Shown here: positions 9,025-62,462 of the stretch, one piece after another
How the letters are laid out: each line of letters starts with the position of its first letter
Numbering within the stretch: the stretch's first letter is position 1
Source of the DNA: Obrimoposthia wandeli
Lineage: Eukaryota
DNA: 64,000 nt
NCBI GenBank assembly: GCA_977020255.1
Contig: CDROCS010003321.1
Coordinates: forward strand, 1 to 64,000
Direction of reading: 5' to 3'
Notes under the pieces: generated by a model
The model's database searches: none
What the model was told of the DNA's origin: nothing
The model's input: only the letters and a program-made list of their open reading frames with translations
Made by a program: the position numbers and the translations under genes

Positions 9025-9365
9025 AATTATATGAGGGGAGTATTTGATTTTTCTAATCCTCTATAAATATTGGTATTGATAGAATATCTCGGAATAATCT
9101 TAAGTCAGCAGCAATAAACCAAACTCATCAACCTGACATTGGTATAATAGCTAGCGTATTATTACCTCATCACTTAATTAGATAATACAATGTTAAATAT
9201 TATATACAGCACATCAGTGAGGTAATTAGGCTTAAACTTGTACAGAAAATATTAACATTATATTTAAATACCCTTTGTGCAAAGGCTTAGGCTTTCATAT
9301 TTCAATTTTTTAAAAACAATTGTACTATCTCCTTTATCAAAAAGGCCCATAGCTAGGATGAGTAA

Positions 9366-30762: not shown

Positions 30763-30808
30763 ACTATCCTTATGTCCAATACTCTTAAGTATTGGACATA
30801 AGGATAGT
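30763..30808. repeat. Perfect inverted repeat, 21-bp arms and 4-bp spacer
   Basis: ACTATCCTTATGTCCAATACT-CTTA-AGTATTGGACATAAGGATAGT, 48 bp upstream of the integrase ATG. Confidence 0.92.
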
Positions 30809-30856
30809 TTCGATTATAATGCCTCTCACACTACATTTACCACTATTTGGACGTTT

Positions 30857-32125
30857 ATGCTTAAAGTCACGCCACTAATCAATACATTTGCTGAAATAAG
30901 AAACCAACGCTCTCTATTGGTTAATCACCAACTAGAAACTCAATATCCTGATTTATCTGCTTTTCTAAGCTCGCTTGATCATTTACAGCCTGTAGCAGAA
31001 AAAGAGCTAATATTTGTATTGGAGTTTTTGCACATAATGGGCCGCAAATCTGATGGCACATATATACGCTTTAGAAATGAAATTGAACGCTGGTGTTTGT
31101 TTTGTTGGCAATCGCGCAGTAAAGGTATTTTTCAAGTGAATCGTAATGATATAGAAGCCTATATTGAGTTTGTATGGAAACCTGATAAAAACTGCATTGG
31201 AACCTCTGTACAGCAAAGGTTTAAACCACATGCCGGTCAATTTAGCTCTAATGATAAGTGGCGTCCGTTTGTCAGTAAAGTTGCAAAATCTATGACAAAA
31301 AAAATGTTAGATGTATCTCCCAATGTCGATGATTACCGCCCATCTCAAGAATCTTTAATTTCAACTTTTACAGCGATTAGTGTGCTATATCAACACGCAC
31401 AAATGGAAGAAATTTGCGATAAAAACTTCGTGCCTGTAGTAAAGAAAAGTTGTCCTTATTTAGTTAAAGAAGTTCAACGCAAGACACCTGATACATTGAG
31501 CGAATTGCAATGGGAATACGTTTTAGAAACAACCATAGACATGGCCGATAAAGACCATCAGTTTGAGCGTAATTTATTTATTATAGTCACCTTAAAATCC
31601 CTTTATTTACGGGTGTCTGAATTATCAGAACATGCGAAATGGCGCCCAAGAATGTCTGACTTTAACAAAGATGATGATGGGTTTTGGTATTTAACCGTCT
31701 TTGGCAAAGGTAATAAAATACGTTCAGTAACGGTGCCCCAAGCTTATTTACTGTTTTTAAAGCGCTACCGAGCTTATAGAGGCCTTTCTTCCCTGCCCTC
31801 GCCTGATGAGGATATAGCGATGCTTAATAAGCTTCGAGGCTCAGGTAATATGAGCGCTAGACAGGTAAGAAGAATAGTAGAACAAAGCTTTGATTATGCG
31901 ATTAAAGCATTACAAAAAGATGGCTTCAATGAGGATGCAAACTATTTAATGGCAGCTACAACACACTGGTTAAGGCATACAGGTGCAACAGCTGATGCAG
32001 GTAGCAGACCATTAAAACATCTGGCTGATGAGCTAGGCCATGCATCATCCGAAACAACCGATAAAAACTATATTCAAAGTAACATAAAGGATAGAGCGAG
32101 AAGTGGCATTAATAGAAAAATCTGA
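30857..32125 (+). CDS. Tyrosine recombinase / site-specific integrase
   Basis: Catalytic set YLRVSE (R), GKGNK (K), HWLRH (HxxR), LGH and KNY (Y). Confidence 0.92.
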   Translation: MLKVTPLINTFAEIRNQRSLLVNHQLETQYPDLSAFLSSLDHLQPVAEKELIFVLEFLHIMGRKSDGTYIRFRNEIERWCLFCWQSRSKGIFQVNRNDIEAYIEFVWKPDKNCIGTSVQQRFKPHAGQFSSNDKWRPFVSKVAKSMTKKMLDVSPNVDDYRPSQESLISTFTAISVLYQHAQMEEICDKNFVPVVKKSCPYLVKEVQRKTPDTLSELQWEYVLETTIDMADKDHQFERNLFIIVTLKSLYLRVSELSEHAKWRPRMSDFNKDDDGFWYLTVFGKGNKIRSVTVPQAYLLFLKRYRAYRGLSSLPSPDEDIAMLNKLRGSGNMSARQVRRIVEQSFDYAIKALQKDGFNEDANYLMAATTHWLRHTGATADAGSRPLKHLADELGHASSETTDKNYIQSNIKDRARSGINRKI

Positions 32126-37743: not shown

Positions 37744-37773
37744 AAAAAAACCAGCGATAACGCTGGTTTTTTT
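37744..37773. terminator. Bidirectional intrinsic terminator
   Basis: A7-CCAGCG-ATAA-CGCTGG-T7 between convergent GFA and htpG genes. Confidence 0.88.
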
Positions 37774-37790
37774 ATAAAGCTAAAAGCTAA

Positions 37791-39719
37791 TTACTTGCTG
37801 AGTTCAAGTAGTAGCTTGTTCAAGCGAGTAACATAGCTTGATGGGTCATCTAATTGACCGCCAGCGGCTAAATCCGCTTGGTCAAAGATGATGTTTGCTA
37901 AATCGCTAAAGCGTTCTTCATCAGTTTCAACGTCCATTTTTTGAATTAATGGATGTTCAACGTTAATTTCAAAAATAGGCTTAGCATCAGGCGCTGCTTG
38001 ACCCGCTGCTTCCATGATTGCCTTCATCTGAGCACCCATATCATATGCATTTAACACAAGACACGCAGGTGATTCAGTTAAGCGATTAGTCACACGAACT
38101 TCAGACACTTTATCTGTTAAGCACTCTTTCAAACGATCCGTTAAACCTTCTGCTTCTTTAGCTGCATCTTCTTGGGCTTTTTTCTCTTCTTCGTTGTCTT
38201 TGTCGCCTAAATCTAGCTCGCCTTTAGCTACATCTTGGAATGACTTAGATTCAAAGTCGAAAATGTGGCTCATCATCCACTCATCGATGCGCTCTGTTAG
38301 CAATAACACTTCGATGCCTTTTTTACGGAAGATCTCTAAGTGCGGGCTGTTTTTAGCAGTATTGTAGTTCTCAGCAGTCACGTAGTAGATCTTTTCCTGA
38401 CCTTCGTTCATGCGTTCAATATAACCGGCAAGCGATACAGTTTGCGCATCATCACTGTTGTGGGTTGATGCAAAACGCATTAGCTTCATGATTTTTTCGC
38501 GGTTAGCAAAGTCTTCAGCAGGCCCTTCTTTAATAACATTACCAAATGCTTTCCAGAAAGTTTGGTACTTATCTTCGTTCTTGCTTAGTTTAGTAAGCAT
38601 ATCCAAAACGCGCTTTGTTAACGCTGCACCTAGTTTTTCTGCCGCTGGATCTTTTTGTAATATTTCGCGAGAAACATTCAAAGATAAGCTTGCTGAATCA
38701 ATTACACCTTTAATGAATCTTAGGTATAAAGGTAGAAACTCATCTACTTGATCCATAATGAAAACACGTTGGATGTACAGTTTTAGTCCACGTGGTGCTT
38801 CACGGTTCCATAAATCATGTGGTGCATTAGTTGGCACGTATAACAAGCTTGTGTATTCTTGCTTGCCTTCTACTCGGTTGTGGCTCCAAGTAAGTGCGTC
38901 AGTGTGGTCGTTTGATAAATGCTTATAAAACTCGTTATAGTCGTTATCTTCAACATCTGACTTATTACGTGTCCAAAGTGCTGATGCAGCGTTAACTGTT
39001 TCATCTTCAAGTACAACGGCTTCTTTTTCAGCTGCCTCATCGCCCTCTGCACTCGGTGCTTCCATCGGCGCTTCTTGCTGCATGATAACCGGTAAAGCAA
39101 TATGATCTGAGTACTTGCGAATTAAATGACGTAAACGGCTGCCATCGGCAAACTCTTCTTCTTCGTCTTTTAAATGCATTACAATTTGTGTGCCGCGCTG
39201 CGCTTTTTCAACAGTGGCTAACGTGAACTCACCTTTACCTTCTGAGCTCCAATGAACACCTTCAGACGCTGGAGTACCGGCTTTACGTGTATAAACATCG
39301 ACAGATTTAGCAACGATAAACGCTGAGTAAAAACCAACACCAAACTGACCAATCAACTGGCTATCTTTAGATTCGTCACCTGTTAACTGCCCTAAGAAGC
39401 TAGCTGTACCAGATTTCGCAATAGTACCTAAATGATCGACCGCTTCAGCGCGTGTCATACCAATGCCATTATCTGCAATCGTGACAGTTTTCGCATCTTT
39501 ATCGTAGCTAATACGAATGTTTAACTCACCATCGCCTTCGTATAAATCACCGTTTTCAAGCGCTTCATATCTTAGCTTCTCAGCTGCATCAGATGCGTTT
39601 GATACTAATTCACGTAGAAATATTTCTTTGTTTGAATACAAAGAGTTAATCATCAAATTAAGTAATTGATTGACTTCTGTTTGAAAGCCTAAAGTTTCTT
39701 GTTGGGTTTCAGTTGTCAT
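37791..39719 (-). CDS. htpG: Hsp90 chaperone HtpG
   Basis: [28 protein letters not shown] and [13 protein letters not shown]. Confidence 0.98.
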
Positions 39720-57313: not shown

Positions 57314-57426
57314 GTCGTTTCTCTAATGCCGTCTCTGGCAATCTGTAGTGAGTGGTCATACTTCCTTGATAATATATTTTCGCTTTTGCTCTATTTCCAT
57401 CATAATATAAAAGTCTGGACTTGACA

Positions 57427-57577
57427 CAGGCTGTGTGAAAACTCCTAAAAGTATGTAAATTACGACTTCAATATGCTTCCATAATATTACTGAATGAATA
57501 GAATCAATGACTTAGATCACGTCTGTTTTCTTAAAAACAGGAAATTAGCGGTCTAATTTGAGTTTTCACACAGTCTG
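57427..57577. mobile_element. 151-bp MITE, copy A
   Basis: 18-bp TIRs CAGGCTGTGTGAAAACTC / GAGTTTTCACACAGTCTG flanked by a GACA duplication (57423-26, 57578-81). Confidence 0.85.
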
Positions 57578-57594
57578 GACACAAAGCGGCCATT

Positions 57595-58419: not shown

Positions 58420-58497
58420 AAATGACCGCTTGAGGCCGTTTCCCGCCTCTAGTGCTTCATAGAGATAAAGGCAGGACCTGACACAAAGCGGCCGTTT
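58420..58497. repeat. Intact palindromic host repeat (empty IS and MITE target)
   Basis: AAATGACCGCTTGAGGCCG...GACACAAAGCGGCCGTTT; outer arms are imperfectly complementary. Confidence 0.75.
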
Positions 58498-59513: not shown

Positions 59514-59800
59514 ACTCATGAAACAAGTCCCAACTAATATCTATTTCTCTTTCAGCAAGTTTGATCATTTGTTATCTTTGATAATGTAGGGCCACCCTGA
59601 GAATAAACATAATAAACGCTAATTTCCATTTCGCAGTTTTTCTTTTTTAATCTTAAAATCGAATCTACGTTTGCCATAGCATTATCAATAACAAAATCTA
59701 TATGTCGTCTAACGCCTTTAGCACACGATTGTTGGAGCACGAAGTGCGGAGACAATTCGCTGTGCCTGAACTTGTTAAAACGGCGCCACAATTAACTTTG
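59514..59800 (-). pseudogene. Frameshifted cassette gene (DUF4279-like)
   Basis: ...CEMEISVYYVYSQGGPTLS continues in another frame as QMIKLAEREIDISWDLFHE*. Confidence 0.5.
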
Positions 59801-60051: not shown

Positions 60052-60156
60052 TATTAACGCCGCCAGCAACCGCCAGAACATGTTGGCTGCTTTTTTGCGG
60101 TTTCTTGCAAAAAAGAAGACAACGTGTGGAGGTCGGCTTGACTGGCCTTGTTAAAT
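60052..60156 (-). other. attC site (long, VCR-like)
   Basis: On the - strand: ATTTAAC-AAGGCCAGTCAAGCCGACC...TTTTTTGCAAGAAACCGCAAAAAA...TTGCTGGCGGC-GTTAATA; the upstream stop overlaps R''. Confidence 0.85.
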
Positions 60157-60498: not shown

Positions 60499-60715
60499 AT
60501 TTAACAGCTTCATAGGCCGAAACATTCCGTGTTTAAACACGGAACCTTTCCGCCTATCATGTTTGATTAATTTAAAATAAATCAACAATAGCATTATATT
60601 TCAATTAGTCACGTTATTTTCAAGCTTATAGCTAGTGTAGAAATGCCGCACAGTTCCGCCTAACAAGCAAAACTTGTCCGCCTCAGCATTGACTGTATAA
60701 AAAACATATAGTAGT
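60499..60715. promoter_or_regulatory. Possible attI / PintI remnant
   Basis: GTTAAAT core (- strand) at 60499-505, a 20-bp palindrome at 60525-544, and TTGACTGTATAAAAAACAT (degenerate LexA-like) on the + strand. Confidence 0.4.
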
Positions 60716-60776
60716 TTTTTGGTTTTCACGCTTAAATGACCGCTTCAGGCCCTGAGTCATTCAGTCAAGAGTTTTG

Positions 60777-62015
60777 TTAGGATAATAGTGGAGAATTCCT
60801 CTTTCTCAAAGCTTGTAAATATTTTGTCTCATCGTAAGGTTTTCGATCTTTCCAGCATTTATAAATGATACGGATCCATTTGTACGCAAGCGCTCTTATA
60901 GCAACTTGATGAGAGTTACCTTTTGCTCGTTGTTTATCGTAGTACAGTGACGCCCAATAAGATGACTGAACTGTTTTAGCTGCCCATTCAACAATGGTTT
61001 GCCTTACAAATTTTGAGCACTGCCATCGCCAATGAATCCAAGTTTTTTGGCCACTACTAACGGTGACAGGAGCAACTCCCGTATAAGCTTGTAATTGTGC
61101 TGCATTATCAAAACGATCTCTGTCTTCACCAAAGGCAACAAGTAACCTAGGACCGAGACAAAGCCCTGCTCCAGGGAGTGATTGAAAAAGTTCTGAATCA
61201 TCCATCTTGTGGAAAAGGCTGGCAATTTTTTTATCAAATTCTCGGATAGAAATAGTGGCGGTTTTGACGAGGGATGCAAGCGACTTGGCAAGCAGTTGGT
61301 AAGGCTCAATAATTGCCACATCCTCTGTTAAATCCATTACCTTTTTGCGCTGCTCTAACCGATGTTCAAGGTTAACACTTGATTGACCACCATATGATTG
61401 AAAGAACTTACGTATCGTTTTTTCATGAGCGCGTTTAAAGCAATCTAGTGTAGGCCAGCGAATAATGAAATCACAAAAAAGCTCTGTATTTCGATGAGAA
61501 AACCAGTCCAAAGGTTGAGGATAGTAGTGTTTCAACGCGCTTATAAGCTGATTTACAAAGCGACGCTTGTCGTCCACTAAGCCTCTTCTTTTCTCAACTA
61601 GCACTTCAAGTGTTCTGATTGAAGCCCCTTGTCGCTCAAGGGGTTTAAATTTATCTGGATACTTGAGCAACAAGTCTAAGGCAATTTCAGCATCTCTAGG
61701 ATCGCTTTTAGCGCCACTGGCTGTAAATGTTTCTCTGTATTTTGCGAGTGTGGCAGCATGAATTGGAAATATGGTAACAAAAGGGTATTTTTGTAATGTA
61801 AAAACGATGGGGCCCTTGTTCAACTCAACTGCTATGGCAATTTTTCCTTTGCTTTGTTTATATAGAGAGTTTATCCATTGGTCGATGGACTCTGGAGAAT
61901 GAGCTATTACTTGGAGGTGACGTTGATTTTTACCCTTATTGTAAATACAAACGTCATGTTTTTTATCAGCCCAATCTAACCCTACATAAACAGCAAAATC
62001 GTTGATAGATTTCAT
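60777..62015 (-). CDS. IS110-family DEDD transposase/recombinase
   Basis: GLDWAD, AVE, KSDPRDA, LPGAG and GVAPVTVSSG. Confidence 0.95.
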   Translation of the reverse strand: MKSINDFAVYVGLDWADKKHDVCIYNKGKNQRHLQVIAHSPESIDQWINSLYKQSKGKIAIAVELNKGPIVFTLQKYPFVTIFPIHAATLAKYRETFTASGAKSDPRDAEIALDLLLKYPDKFKPLERQGASIRTLEVLVEKRRGLVDDKRRFVNQLISALKHYYPQPLDWFSHRNTELFCDFIIRWPTLDCFKRAHEKTIRKFFQSYGGQSSVNLEHRLEQRKKVMDLTEDVAIIEPYQLLAKSLASLVKTATISIREFDKKIASLFHKMDDSELFQSLPGAGLCLGPRLLVAFGEDRDRFDNAAQLQAYTGVAPVTVSSGQKTWIHWRWQCSKFVRQTIVEWAAKTVQSSYWASLYYDKQRAKGNSHQVAIRALAYKWIRIIYKCWKDRKPYDETKYLQALRKRNSPLLS

Positions 62016-62049
62016 ATTGATATCTCCTGTTAAAAAGGTGTTATCAAGT

Positions 62050-62230
62050 GTGCCTTAGCTCTGCGAAGCAAATATAGTCAGTAATTTGAAAGTGCGTGCC
62101 CTGAGTGTTCGTTATCGAGCAAAGGCGTAACTACAATATCGAAACAAAAGCGGTAAACATCGAATGTTCTTGGCCGTATATTCGTATATTGCAGCTACCA
62201 ACTTGGCAATCATATTATGAATGATTTTAA
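62050..62230 (-). ncRNA. Predicted bridge/seek RNA of the IS110 element (boundaries approximate)
   Basis: Contains donor-matching 9-mer and 12-mer segments and target-matching segments inside stem-flanked loops. Confidence 0.7.
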
Positions 62231-62298
62231 GTCTGAATGACTATATTTGGCCGATTTCAGCCACAGATTCAAACATTCGAATGAGTTGGGATTTGACA

Positions 62299-62449
62299 CA
62301 GACTGTGTAAAAACTCCTAAAACCATGTTGAAAACGCCTTTCATACACATCTTATAAAATATCGGGCTCATAAGATCAATAGCTTAGACTATAGCTATTT
62401 TTTCAAATGCCGCTAATTGACAGTTTAATCTGAGTTTTCACACAATCTG
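62299..62449. mobile_element. 151-bp MITE, copy B
   Basis: TIRs CAGACTGTGTAAAAACTC / GAGTTTTCACACAATCTG with a GACA duplication (62295-98, 62450-53). Confidence 0.85.
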
Positions 62450-62462
62450 GACAAAAGCGGAC

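What the first reader, a model, noticed from the sequence alone, without database searches (positions are those of the whole stretch)
62050..62230. Bridge-RNA guides readable directly: donor loop and target loop both decoded
Seen, donor loop: 62098-62106 (GCCCTGAGT) is identical to the IS end at 60749-60757, and 62069-62080 (CAAATATAGTCA) is the exact reverse complement of the other end at 62238-62249. Seen, target loop: 62134-62191 is closed by a CAATAT-CGAA/TTCG-T-ATATTG stem with an inner AACAT/ATGTT hairpin, flanked by AAGCGGT (62148-54; RNA ACCGCUU equals target 60739-45 and 58425-31) and GGCCGT (62172-77; equals the empty site 58434-39). On the - strand the order is target loop then donor loop, as established for IS621 bridge RNA. 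Inference: a programmable recombinase with a GGCC-containing core, naturally aimed at the cassette-associated palindromic repeat.
Basis: partly seen in the sequence, partly recalled or inferred. Interest (0 to 1): 0.88.

Follow-up and report, generated by a model that had tools for sequence, protein, structure and literature searches.

The report
Bridge RNA of an IS110 element

Summary
Confirmed, and of a known kind. All four string matches are exact at the stated coordinates. The element is a single-copy IS110-family insertion sequence of about 1.5 kb. Its 412-aa transposase (60777-62015, minus strand) passes Pfam and NCBIfam 'IS110 family RNA-guided transposase'. The non-coding RNA lies upstream of it (about 62052-62233, minus strand): a 5' stem-loop, then the target loop, then the donor loop, as in IS621.

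Comparison with about 140 homologous elements supports this. There are 15 classes of left target guide, and each matches its own left flank (96 of 103 independent insertions match 6/6). The stems covary, and right-guide and handshake positions covary as well.

One correction. Empty sites in E. coli and Klebsiella, and variable junction bases, place the 2-nt core after the seventh left-target base (donor GA, left junction AA here), not inside GGCC. The IS body is therefore 60747-62245.

The target is a roughly 28-bp imperfect palindromic repeat. It occurs in this cassette-like region and also on other bacterial contigs of the assembly; it is not an attC site. The site at 58425-39 is only near-cognate.

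No RNA data exist. The clade (ISEsa2, ISCps4/5) is already in the published bridge-RNA catalogue.

The parts
60747..62245 (-). Body of the IS110-family insertion sequence (1499 bp; 1501 bp with one core copy)
   Evidence: Boundaries inferred by homology with sister elements whose occupied and empty sites were compared, and from the junction alignments. Only one copy in the 1.35-Gb assembly.
60777..62015 (-). Transposase/recombinase gene, 412 aa
   Evidence: Pfam DEDD_Tnp_IS110 (1-155 of 155) and Transposase_20. NCBIfam NF033542 'IS110 family RNA-guided transposase', 164.8 bits against a cut-off of 140. The Tnp domain aligns to IS621 (8wt6) with the catalytic Ser conserved in an SSG motif.
62052..62233 (-). 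Predicted bridge RNA (5' stem-loop, target-binding loop, donor-binding loop); both ends are approximate
   Evidence: Fold. Consensus structure with 13 compensatory pairs across 33 diverse homologues. No Rfam family matches.
62198..62233 (-). 5' stem-loop of the RNA
   Evidence: Fold. A stem at this position varies in sequence across homologues.
62128..62197 (-). Target-binding loop with its closing stem (CGAA/UUCG at the base of the loop)
   Evidence: The outer 12-bp stem shows up to 21 both-side changes per pair.
62169..62177 (-). Left target guide: ACGGCCA plus core guide AG (same sense as the left target)
   Evidence: Matches left-flank positions 2-7 (CGGCCA). 15 guide classes each match their own flanks; the class-level shuffle reached the observed score 0 of 20000 times.
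62145..62154 (-). Right target guide ACCGCU, then core-facing UU, then handshake UG
   Evidence: Complementary to the right target AGCGGT (60739-44) plus the core. Compensatory changes in L130 (CCGGU with ACCGG) and the L127 clade (CCGCA with TGCGG).
62094..62106 (-). Left donor guide ACUCAGGGC(AC)G
   Evidence: Nine nt identical to the right end of the IS (60749-57). The segment is conserved family-wide. Donor positions 6-7 are not matched in this element.
62069..62080 (-). Right donor guide UGACUAUA, then core-facing UU, then handshake UG
   Evidence: Complementary to 62238-62249: left IS end TATAGTCA, core AA and target positions 6-7 (CA). The first handshake base is Watson-Crick with target position 7 in all 10 class combinations.
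62246..62247 (-). Left copy of the core dinucleotide (AA in element orientation)
   Evidence: This position varies among copies of the same IS and equals the dinucleotide found in empty sites.
60745..60746 (-). Right copy of the core dinucleotide (GA in element orientation)
   Evidence: GA in 100 of 101 independent insertions of the clade.
62248..62254 (-). Left target, 7 nt (TCGGCCA)
60734..60744 (-). Right target (AGCGGTCATTT)
   Evidence: The same right half is found in empty copies of the repeat.
62240..62245 (-). -10 box TATAGT at the left IS end
   Evidence: Read from the sequence. It lies 18 nt after the -35 box once the ends are joined in a circle. This is an inference; no expression data.
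60763..60768 (-). -35 box TTGACT in the right IS end
   Evidence: Read from the sequence. The same arrangement occurs in the E. coli relative.
58425..58439 (-). Unoccupied near-cognate copy of the target repeat (ACGGCCT-CA-AGCGGT)
   Evidence: It mismatches the left target guide at position 7 and in the core.

Best explanation
This is the bridge RNA gene of an intact, single-copy IS110-group insertion sequence of the ISEsa2/ISCps clade.

Proposed mechanism. After excision the ends join into a circle. This places a -35 box (TTGACT, right end) 18 nt upstream of a -10 box (TATAGT, left end) and drives an RNA of about 180 nt.

Target-binding loop. [quoted passage not shown] Donor-binding loop. It reads the joined IS ends in the same way: ACUCAGGGC for the right end and UGACUAUA+UU for the left end.

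Handshake. Two bases 3' of each right guide (UG) pair with positions 6-7 of the other DNA after top-strand exchange.

Outcome. The DEDD/Ser recombinase exchanges strands at a 2-nt purine-rich core (donor GA). The IS is inserted into a roughly 28-bp palindromic repeat of consensus GGCWG-N3-TCGGCC-WRA-AGCNGYC-ATTT.

Shown here: the sequence matches, the protein family, the RNA structure covariation, the guide-to-flank covariation and the position of the core in sister elements. Inferred: transcription, RNA binding and activity of this copy.
For: Protein. Pfam and NCBIfam hits are full length and above cut-off, and the Tnp domain is homologous to IS621.

Layout. The left non-coding end is 230 nt and the right is 30 nt, as in the IS110 group.

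Exact matches to both ends.

Structure. The target-loop stem has 13 pairs with compensatory changes, and invariant CGAA/UUCG closes both loops.

Guide covariation. 96 of 103 unique insertions match 6/6 between the left target guide and the flank. There are 15 guide classes; 82 of 90 class-level matches against a shuffled mean of 35.7 and maximum of 60. The right donor guide changes with the left end. The right target guide shows compensatory changes, and the handshake base is Watson-Crick with target position 7 in 10 of 10 classes.

Core position. E. coli occupied versus empty site, two empty Klebsiella sites, and an exact predicted empty site TCGGCCA-AA-AGCGGTCATTT on contig C2422.

Prior literature. 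The conventions follow PMC11208160 and PMC11208158. ISEsa2 is listed there with its bridge RNA in the left end.
Against: There is no RNA evidence: no run on record as RNA holds the stretch, and the one possible RNA run gives only low-depth contigs of a related copy.

There is only one copy in the assembly, and no circle or excision joint was seen, so activity of this copy is unproven.

The left donor guide does not match donor positions 6-7 next to the core in this element. The left target guide mismatches target position 1 and one core base.

For this clade (window, L073) the core position rests on homology.
Confidence: 0.86

Rival explanations
1. The same bridge RNA, but with the crossover. 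The core lies within the GGCC shared by both junctions, and the IS runs from about 60751 to 62249.
For: GGCC is present at both junctions. The homologous region on contig C5945 reads TCGGCC-TGA-AGC, which equals the window's right junction from GGCC onwards.
Against: In sister elements the bases corresponding to CTGA are constant among copies at different sites and are absent from three empty sites. The two bases before TATAGTC vary among copies of one IS in one genome (L047-L051). Under this model the left target guide would have to read donor bases, which is not the IS621 logic. An empty repeat with GGCC-AAA-AGC, as the revised model predicts, exists on C2422 and C1004.
Confidence: 0.1
2. 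The repeats are protein-binding subterminal repeats or an mRNA leader of the transposase gene. Target choice is made by the protein, and no guide RNA is involved.
For: No RNA has been observed here. The donor-side segments are conserved rather than variable in most of the family.
Against: The left target guide changes in step with flanking host DNA across 15 classes, while the protein stays 55-60% identical. The stems show compensatory changes typical of a structured RNA. The family is experimentally RNA-guided (PMC11208160, PMC11208158, PMC11187229).
Confidence: 0.02
3. The architecture is genuine, but this copy is a stranded, no longer mobile relic.
For: There is a single copy in the assembly. 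No circle or empty-site joints were seen in the source run. The left donor guide is mismatched at donor positions 6-7.
Against: The reading frame is intact and full length, 86% identical to L073, which has identical guides in a different genome and site. Near-identical copies in other flanks occur in marine metagenome runs. The same donor-guide mismatches are shared by L125 and L126, so they are a clade trait and not decay.
Confidence: 0.25

Closest known systems
IS621 bridge RNA and recombinase (Durrant et al. 2024, PMC11208160; Hiraizumi et al. 2024, PMC11208158)
   Same: DEDD plus Ser recombinase. RNA encoded in the left end, with a 5' stem-loop, then the target loop, then the donor loop. 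[quoted passage not shown] A 2-nt core, handshake guides 3' of the right guides, and a promoter rebuilt across the joined ends.
   Different: The protein is only distantly related (E = 4.5e-6 over the Tnp domain; 412 aa against 326 aa). The core is purine-rich (donor GA) and is read by UU (U-A and U.G) instead of CT read by AG. The right target guide is longer (6 nt plus core). The left donor guide is offset, with mismatches at donor positions 6-7. The target is a different palindromic repeat.
ISEsa2 / ISCps4 / ISCps5 / ISCfr13 cluster of ISfinder (listed in the supplements of PMC11208160; PGAP name 'IS110-like element ISEsa2 family transposase')
   Same: The same clade: 55-60% protein identity, the same RNA architecture, the same conserved donor guide CUCAGGGC and right target guide CCGCU-UU, and the same right half-site AGCGG.
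   Different: A different left target guide (ACGGCCA instead of UGAGCGA or UGUGCCA), and therefore a different left half-site. The host is a marine bacterium whose contig sits in a large mixed assembly.
seekRNA of ISEc21, IS110 type (Siddiquee et al. 2024, PMC11187229)
   Same: A non-coding region upstream of the transposase gene yields a short RNA with segments matching both strands of the target.
   Different: A different element and target. The seekRNA work defines a shorter, target-only RNA. No sequence comparison was made here.
IS1111-attC group (ISKpn4, ISPst6; Tetu and Holmes 2008; Post and Hall 2009, cited in PMC11187229)
   Same: Relatives in the wider family that sit in integron cassette arrays.
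   Different: Those elements carry the RNA downstream of the gene, have subterminal inverted repeats, and insert into attC itself. Here the RNA is upstream and the target is a separate palindromic repeat.
REP-targeting IS110-family elements (IS621 in E. coli; ISPpu9 and ISPpu10 in P. putida, PMC12288879 and bioRxiv 2026.03.19.712850)
   Same: The natural targets are short intergenic palindromic repeats present in several copies.
   Different: The repeat sequence differs. Whether hairpin structure matters for this element was not tested.

Membership tests
IS110-family (IS110 group) bridge-RNA-guided recombinase | N-terminal DEDD RuvC-like domain and C-terminal Tnp domain with a catalytic serine | tested here: met
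   PF01548 over 1-155 of 155 and PF02371. NF033542 at 164.8 bits against a cut-off of 140. The serine aligned with IS621's catalytic serine is conserved.
IS110-family (IS110 group) bridge-RNA-guided recombinase | Long non-coding left end upstream of the gene and a short right end (the IS1111 group has the reverse) | tested here: met
   230 nt upstream and 30 nt downstream of the CDS within the IS. The criterion is from PMC11208160.
IS110-family (IS110 group) bridge-RNA-guided recombinase | Structured RNA with two internal loops, target loop before donor loop, supported by covariation | tested here: met
   RNAalifold on 33 homologues gave 28 pairs, 13 of them with both-side changes. Single-sequence fold z = -3.15.
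IS110-family (IS110 group) bridge-RNA-guided recombinase | [quoted passage not shown] | tested here: met
   for this element; for the family.
IS110-family (IS110 group) bridge-RNA-guided recombinase | Guides covary with target and donor across orthologues | tested here: met
   Left target guide: 15 classes, 0 of 20000 shuffles reached the observed score. Changes in the right donor guide, right target guide and handshake bases.
IS110-family (IS110 group) bridge-RNA-guided recombinase | A 2-nt core present in donor and target and flanking the inserted element | tested here: inconclusive
   This copy has AA on the left and GA on the right. In the family the right copy is GA in 100 of 101 insertions and the left copy follows the target. 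The position is fixed by empty sites of sister elements only.
IS110-family (IS110 group) bridge-RNA-guided recombinase | A promoter rebuilt across the joined ends of the circular form | tested here: inconclusive
   TTGACT, 18 nt, TATAGT is formed when 60747 is joined to 62245 through one core. No circle junction was seen in the runs, and there are no expression data.
IS110-family (IS110 group) bridge-RNA-guided recombinase | The RNA is made, binds the recombinase and directs recombination | not testable with these tools
   No run on record as RNA holds the stretch.
IS1111-attC group | RNA region downstream of the gene, and insertion into an attC site | tested here: not met
   The RNA region is upstream. 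The target repeat lacks the attC end boxes and also occurs on other contigs.
Integron cassette array without integrase (setting of the target) | Small same-strand ORFs separated by attC sites, with no intI nearby | tested here: inconclusive
   GNAT, GFA, DUF6678 and DUF553 ORFs all lie on the minus strand. attC-like hairpins are seen by eye at 59707-59780, 60052-60156 and 60499-60567, but my crude scan did not beat its controls. ORFs were listed only between 52 and 84 kb of the contig and Pfam was run on ten of them (53.5-63.7 kb), none an integrase. The rest of the contig was not screened, and another first-stage note reports a tyrosine recombinase at 30763-32125.

The most novel reading that the evidence does not exclude
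The whole ISEsa2/ISCps clade may be a natural 'half-programmable' bridge system. The right half-site (AGCGG) and a wobble-tolerant UU core reader are kept fixed from Enterobacterales to marine Gammaproteobacteria and to Thiobacillus and Sideroxydans (other Proteobacteria), and only the left guide is re-written. In this way the clade would chase variants of one widespread palindromic repeat, possibly the tips of an inverted-repeat element. In addition, the left junction always keeps the target's core and the right junction the donor's core. This implies that only top-strand information survives, for example through resolution by replication rather than by a second strand exchange.
Probability: 0.3. 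Interest if true: 0.55.

Novelty: new member of a known kind. Interest (0 to 1): 0.33.

Why it matters
It adds one more naturally decoded bridge recombinase, distant from IS621, with all guide segments, the handshake bases, the core and the natural target assigned from sequence alone. It could serve as another orthologue for genome-engineering screens.

It also shows that the first-stage reading of raw sequence recovers bridge-RNA guides correctly. The same case shows where such a reading slips: chance similarity between the donor and target arms shifts the inferred crossover by a few bases.

The family-level by-products may interest people who work on the mechanism. These are a fixed right half-site, a UU core reader that tolerates purine cores, and the one-sided inheritance of the core. 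None of this changes the picture of what these elements are.

Tried and rejected
- Rfam (E up to 1) has no family for this RNA. The only hit was a chance isrJ match inside the CDS.
- A search for an orthologous empty site in 26 Pectobacterium genomes found nothing, because the flank is accessory DNA.
I dropped it after the Klebsiella and E. coli empty sites and the variable junction dinucleotide.
- A model with the core at donor positions 6-7 (CT/GT) was rejected. It predicts a constant left and a variable right dinucleotide, which is the opposite of what is seen.
- A regex-plus-folding scan for attC sites did not discriminate the cassette region from ordinary DNA, so attC calls remain by eye.
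- RNA evidence: two run searches and one read-laying gave no run on record as RNA, no circle joint and no excision joint.
- Some early regexes for guide extraction were too narrow and were replaced by column extraction from the alignment.
- The host organism was not identified.
- No covariance model was built, and orphan RNA copies were not searched for.

Full report
**What is there**

The window is the first 64 kb of a 166-kb bacterial contig (C3321) inside a 1.35-Gb, 6912-contig assembly. Between 60747 and 62245 lies a single-copy insertion sequence. Its only long ORF (60777-62015, minus strand, 412 aa) has a full-length DEDD_Tnp_IS110 domain and a Transposase_20 domain. It passes NCBIfam NF033542, 'IS110 family RNA-guided transposase', at 164.8 bits against a cut-off of 140. 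Its Tnp domain aligns to the solved IS621 recombinase with the catalytic serine conserved, but only at E = 4.5e-6. It is therefore a distant relative of the model enzyme. The non-coding part is 230 nt upstream of the gene and 30 nt downstream. That is the layout of the IS110 group rather than the IS1111 group (criterion from PMC11208160).

**The observation**

- The 12-mer at 62069-80 and its reverse complement at 62238-49 are the only two copies in the window, with 0.02 expected.
- The 9-mer at 62098-106 and 60749-57 are likewise the only two copies, with 0.18 expected.
- The RNA read from the minus strand folds into a 5' stem-loop, then a long stem closed by CGAA/UUCG around an internal loop with a small inner hairpin, then a second module also closed by CGAA/UUCG.
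- No Rfam family matches.

**Evidence from relatives**

I fetched 80 loci from genomes and 80 from metagenomes that encode relatives of the protein. Most are 52-63% identical; the closest are L073 at 86%, L125 at 79% and L126 at 76%. The upstream regions align throughout.

- On 33 non-redundant sequences RNAalifold predicts the target-loop stem, the inner hairpin and both CGAA/UUCG closures. 13 of the 28 pairs keep pairing through changes on both sides, with up to 21 such sequences per pair.
- The segment on the 5' side of the first loop falls into 15 sequence classes, and each class equals the host DNA just left of its own element. Among 103 independent insertions, 96 match at all six of positions 2-7. 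With one consensus flank per class, 82 of 90 positions match, against a shuffled mean of 35.7 and a maximum of 60; none of 20000 shuffles reached the observed value.
- The right donor guide changes together with the left IS end.
- The right target guide shows compensatory changes: CCGGU with ACCGG in L130, and CCGCA with TGCGG in the L127 clade.

**Where the crossover is**

Sister elements show otherwise.

- In E. coli an occupied site reads ...TGTGCCA-GG-TATAGTC ... GGGCGT-GA-AGCGGAC. A homologous empty site reads ...TGTGCCA-AA-GGCGGAC.
- Two empty sites in a Klebsiella genome read TGTGCC-AGG-AGCGGAC and TGTGCC-AGA-AGCAGAC.
- So the IS-derived part begins at TATAGTC and ends at ...CTCAGGGCGT.
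- The dinucleotide before TATAGTC varies among copies of one IS within one genome (L047-L051). It takes many values across the clade (GG, GA, AA, AG, AC, TA and others). The dinucleotide after the right end is GA in 100 of 101 cases.
- This places a 2-nt core directly after the seventh left-target base, as in IS621 (positions 8-9; PMC11208158).

Transferred to the window by alignment, the assignments in element orientation are:

- left target TCGGCCA (62248-54)
- left core copy AA (62246-47)
- left IS end TATAGTCA...
- right IS end ...CTCAGGGCCT
- right core copy GA (60745-46)
- right target AGCGGTCATTT (60734-44)

**The guides re-read**

- Left target guide: ACGGCCA plus AG (62169-77).
- Right target guide: ACCGCU, then UU facing the core (U-A and U.G), then UG (62145-54).
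- Left donor guide: ACUCAGGGC(AC)G (62094-106).
- Right donor guide: UGACUAUA, then UU, then UG (62069-80).

The two bases after each right guide behave as the handshake guides of IS621. The first base of the donor-loop pair is Watson-Crick with target position 7 in all 10 class combinations. The second base of the target-loop pair is complementary to donor position 6 in most. It consists of eight bases of IS end, two of core and two of target (CA), which is the sequence the donor loop holds after strand exchange. Both right guides carry UU at the core in 99 of 101 elements, which fits a purine-purine core.

**Caveat on the core for this clade**

For the window and L073 the two junction sequences are identical, so the core position here rests on homology. 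Contig C5945 of the same assembly is 96.8% identical to the window right of the site (60502-60751). It carries an unoccupied repeat reading TCGGCC-TGA-AGC, which would also fit a crossover within GGCC. However, its left side is unrelated, so it is not an orthologous empty allele. Empty repeats reading TCGGCCA-AA-AGC, exactly as the revised model predicts, exist on C2422 and C1004.

**The target**

A pattern search of the assembly finds nine copies, against one for the reversed control, of an imperfect palindrome of about 28 bp with consensus GGCWG-N3-TCGGCC-WRA-AGCNGYC-ATTT. The copies lie on eight contigs.

- Two copies lie in this window: the occupied one and 58420-47.

The surrounding 56.8-63.0 kb does look like a cassette array. 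It holds small minus-strand ORFs (GNAT, DUF553, DUF6678, GFA) separated by attC-like hairpins, and sits between an acyl-CoA synthetase gene and a TetR gene. None of the ten ORFs scanned between 53.5 and 63.7 kb is an integrase; the rest of the contig was not screened, and another first-stage note reports a tyrosine recombinase at 30763-32125. My attC scan did not beat its controls. The target repeat is not attC, and it also occurs on contigs with other contexts. 'Cassette-associated' is therefore only partly right. It is better described as a REP-like repeat, the usual kind of target for this family.

**Expression and activity**

Joining 60747 to 62245 through one core gives TTGACT, 18 nt, TATAGT, the arrangement reported for IS621 and other family members. 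This is read from sequence only. No run on record as RNA holds the stretch. One marine run that may be RNA, and two other runs of unrecorded kind, hold related copies in other flanks. The source run shows neither a circle joint nor an empty-site joint. Transcription, RNA binding and mobility of this copy remain inferred.

**Novelty**

Bridge RNAs of IS110 elements were described in 2024 (PMC11208160, PMC11208158), as were seekRNAs (PMC11187229). The enteric relatives found here are annotated as the ISEsa2 family. ISEsa2, clustered with ISCps4/5 and ISCfr13, is listed in the supplement of the first paper with its RNA in the left end. This is a new member of a known kind. The by-products worth a specialist's glance are listed under 'noticed in passing' and in the notebook. 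They are the family-wide fixed right half-site, the UU core reader, the one-sided inheritance of the core, the donor-guide offset, and the link between the half-site and a MITE-like inverted repeat.

Noticed in passing
window 57412-57584 and 62284-62456; L119 (C5945) 2556-2733: A MITE-like repeat of about 172 nt with terminal inverted repeats GAGTTTTCACACAG... The two window copies are 72-77% alike, and a copy 98% identical to the first lies on contig C5945. Its end abuts AAAGCGG(C/A)C, which is the family's right half-site. Three unrelated IS loci (L036, L178, L183) have TTTTCACACAGCC directly left of their left target. The IS clade may be targeting the tips of this kind of element.
   Followed up: partly
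loci L002-L204 (junction tables): The left-junction core is highly variable and follows the target, while the right-junction core is GA in 100 of 101 insertions. Only top-strand information seems to survive recombination.
   Followed up: partly
L106 2990-3015 and 4495-4515; L107 685-715: In E. coli an ISEsa2-like element sits in a 24-bp palindrome (GTCCGCTTTGTGCCAAAGGCGGAC) upstream of a yeeP-like GTPase gene, next to Ag43, at the edge of an island. The 406-nt left flank occurs at 9238 places in 4164 of 5426 complete genomes.
   Followed up: partly
L045, L026, L153, L156: These elements carry a left target guide of one class (UGAGCGA or UGUGCCA) but sit in a site of the other class. The cause could be off-target insertion or recombination between sister IS.
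   Followed up: no
window 60747-60755 compared with C5945:17491-17499: The donor left arm plus core (AGGGCCT-GA) resembles natural target variants (TCGGCCT-GA). The enteric sisters show a similar resemblance (AGGGCGT-GA against TGAGCGA-GA). The cause is unknown.
   Followed up: no
G000 contigs C2814:201715-204113, C2422, C1004, C5465, C5945, C4649: The assembly holds contigs of several related bacteria. For example, C2814 is 80.8% identical to window 37744-39164. It is therefore a host genome mixed with a bacterial community, not one bacterium.
   Followed up: no
window 60502-60751 compared with L119 1511-1761: Synteny with contig C5945 (96.8% identity) stops exactly at the target repeat, and the DNA left of it differs. 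The repeat marks a rearrangement breakpoint.
   Followed up: no
L116, L122, L123 (C2422 and C2814): Three copies of the target repeat lie about 55 nt downstream of a conserved AATAAAGTTGCATACTAGAAT motif, outside any cassette-like setting.
   Followed up: no
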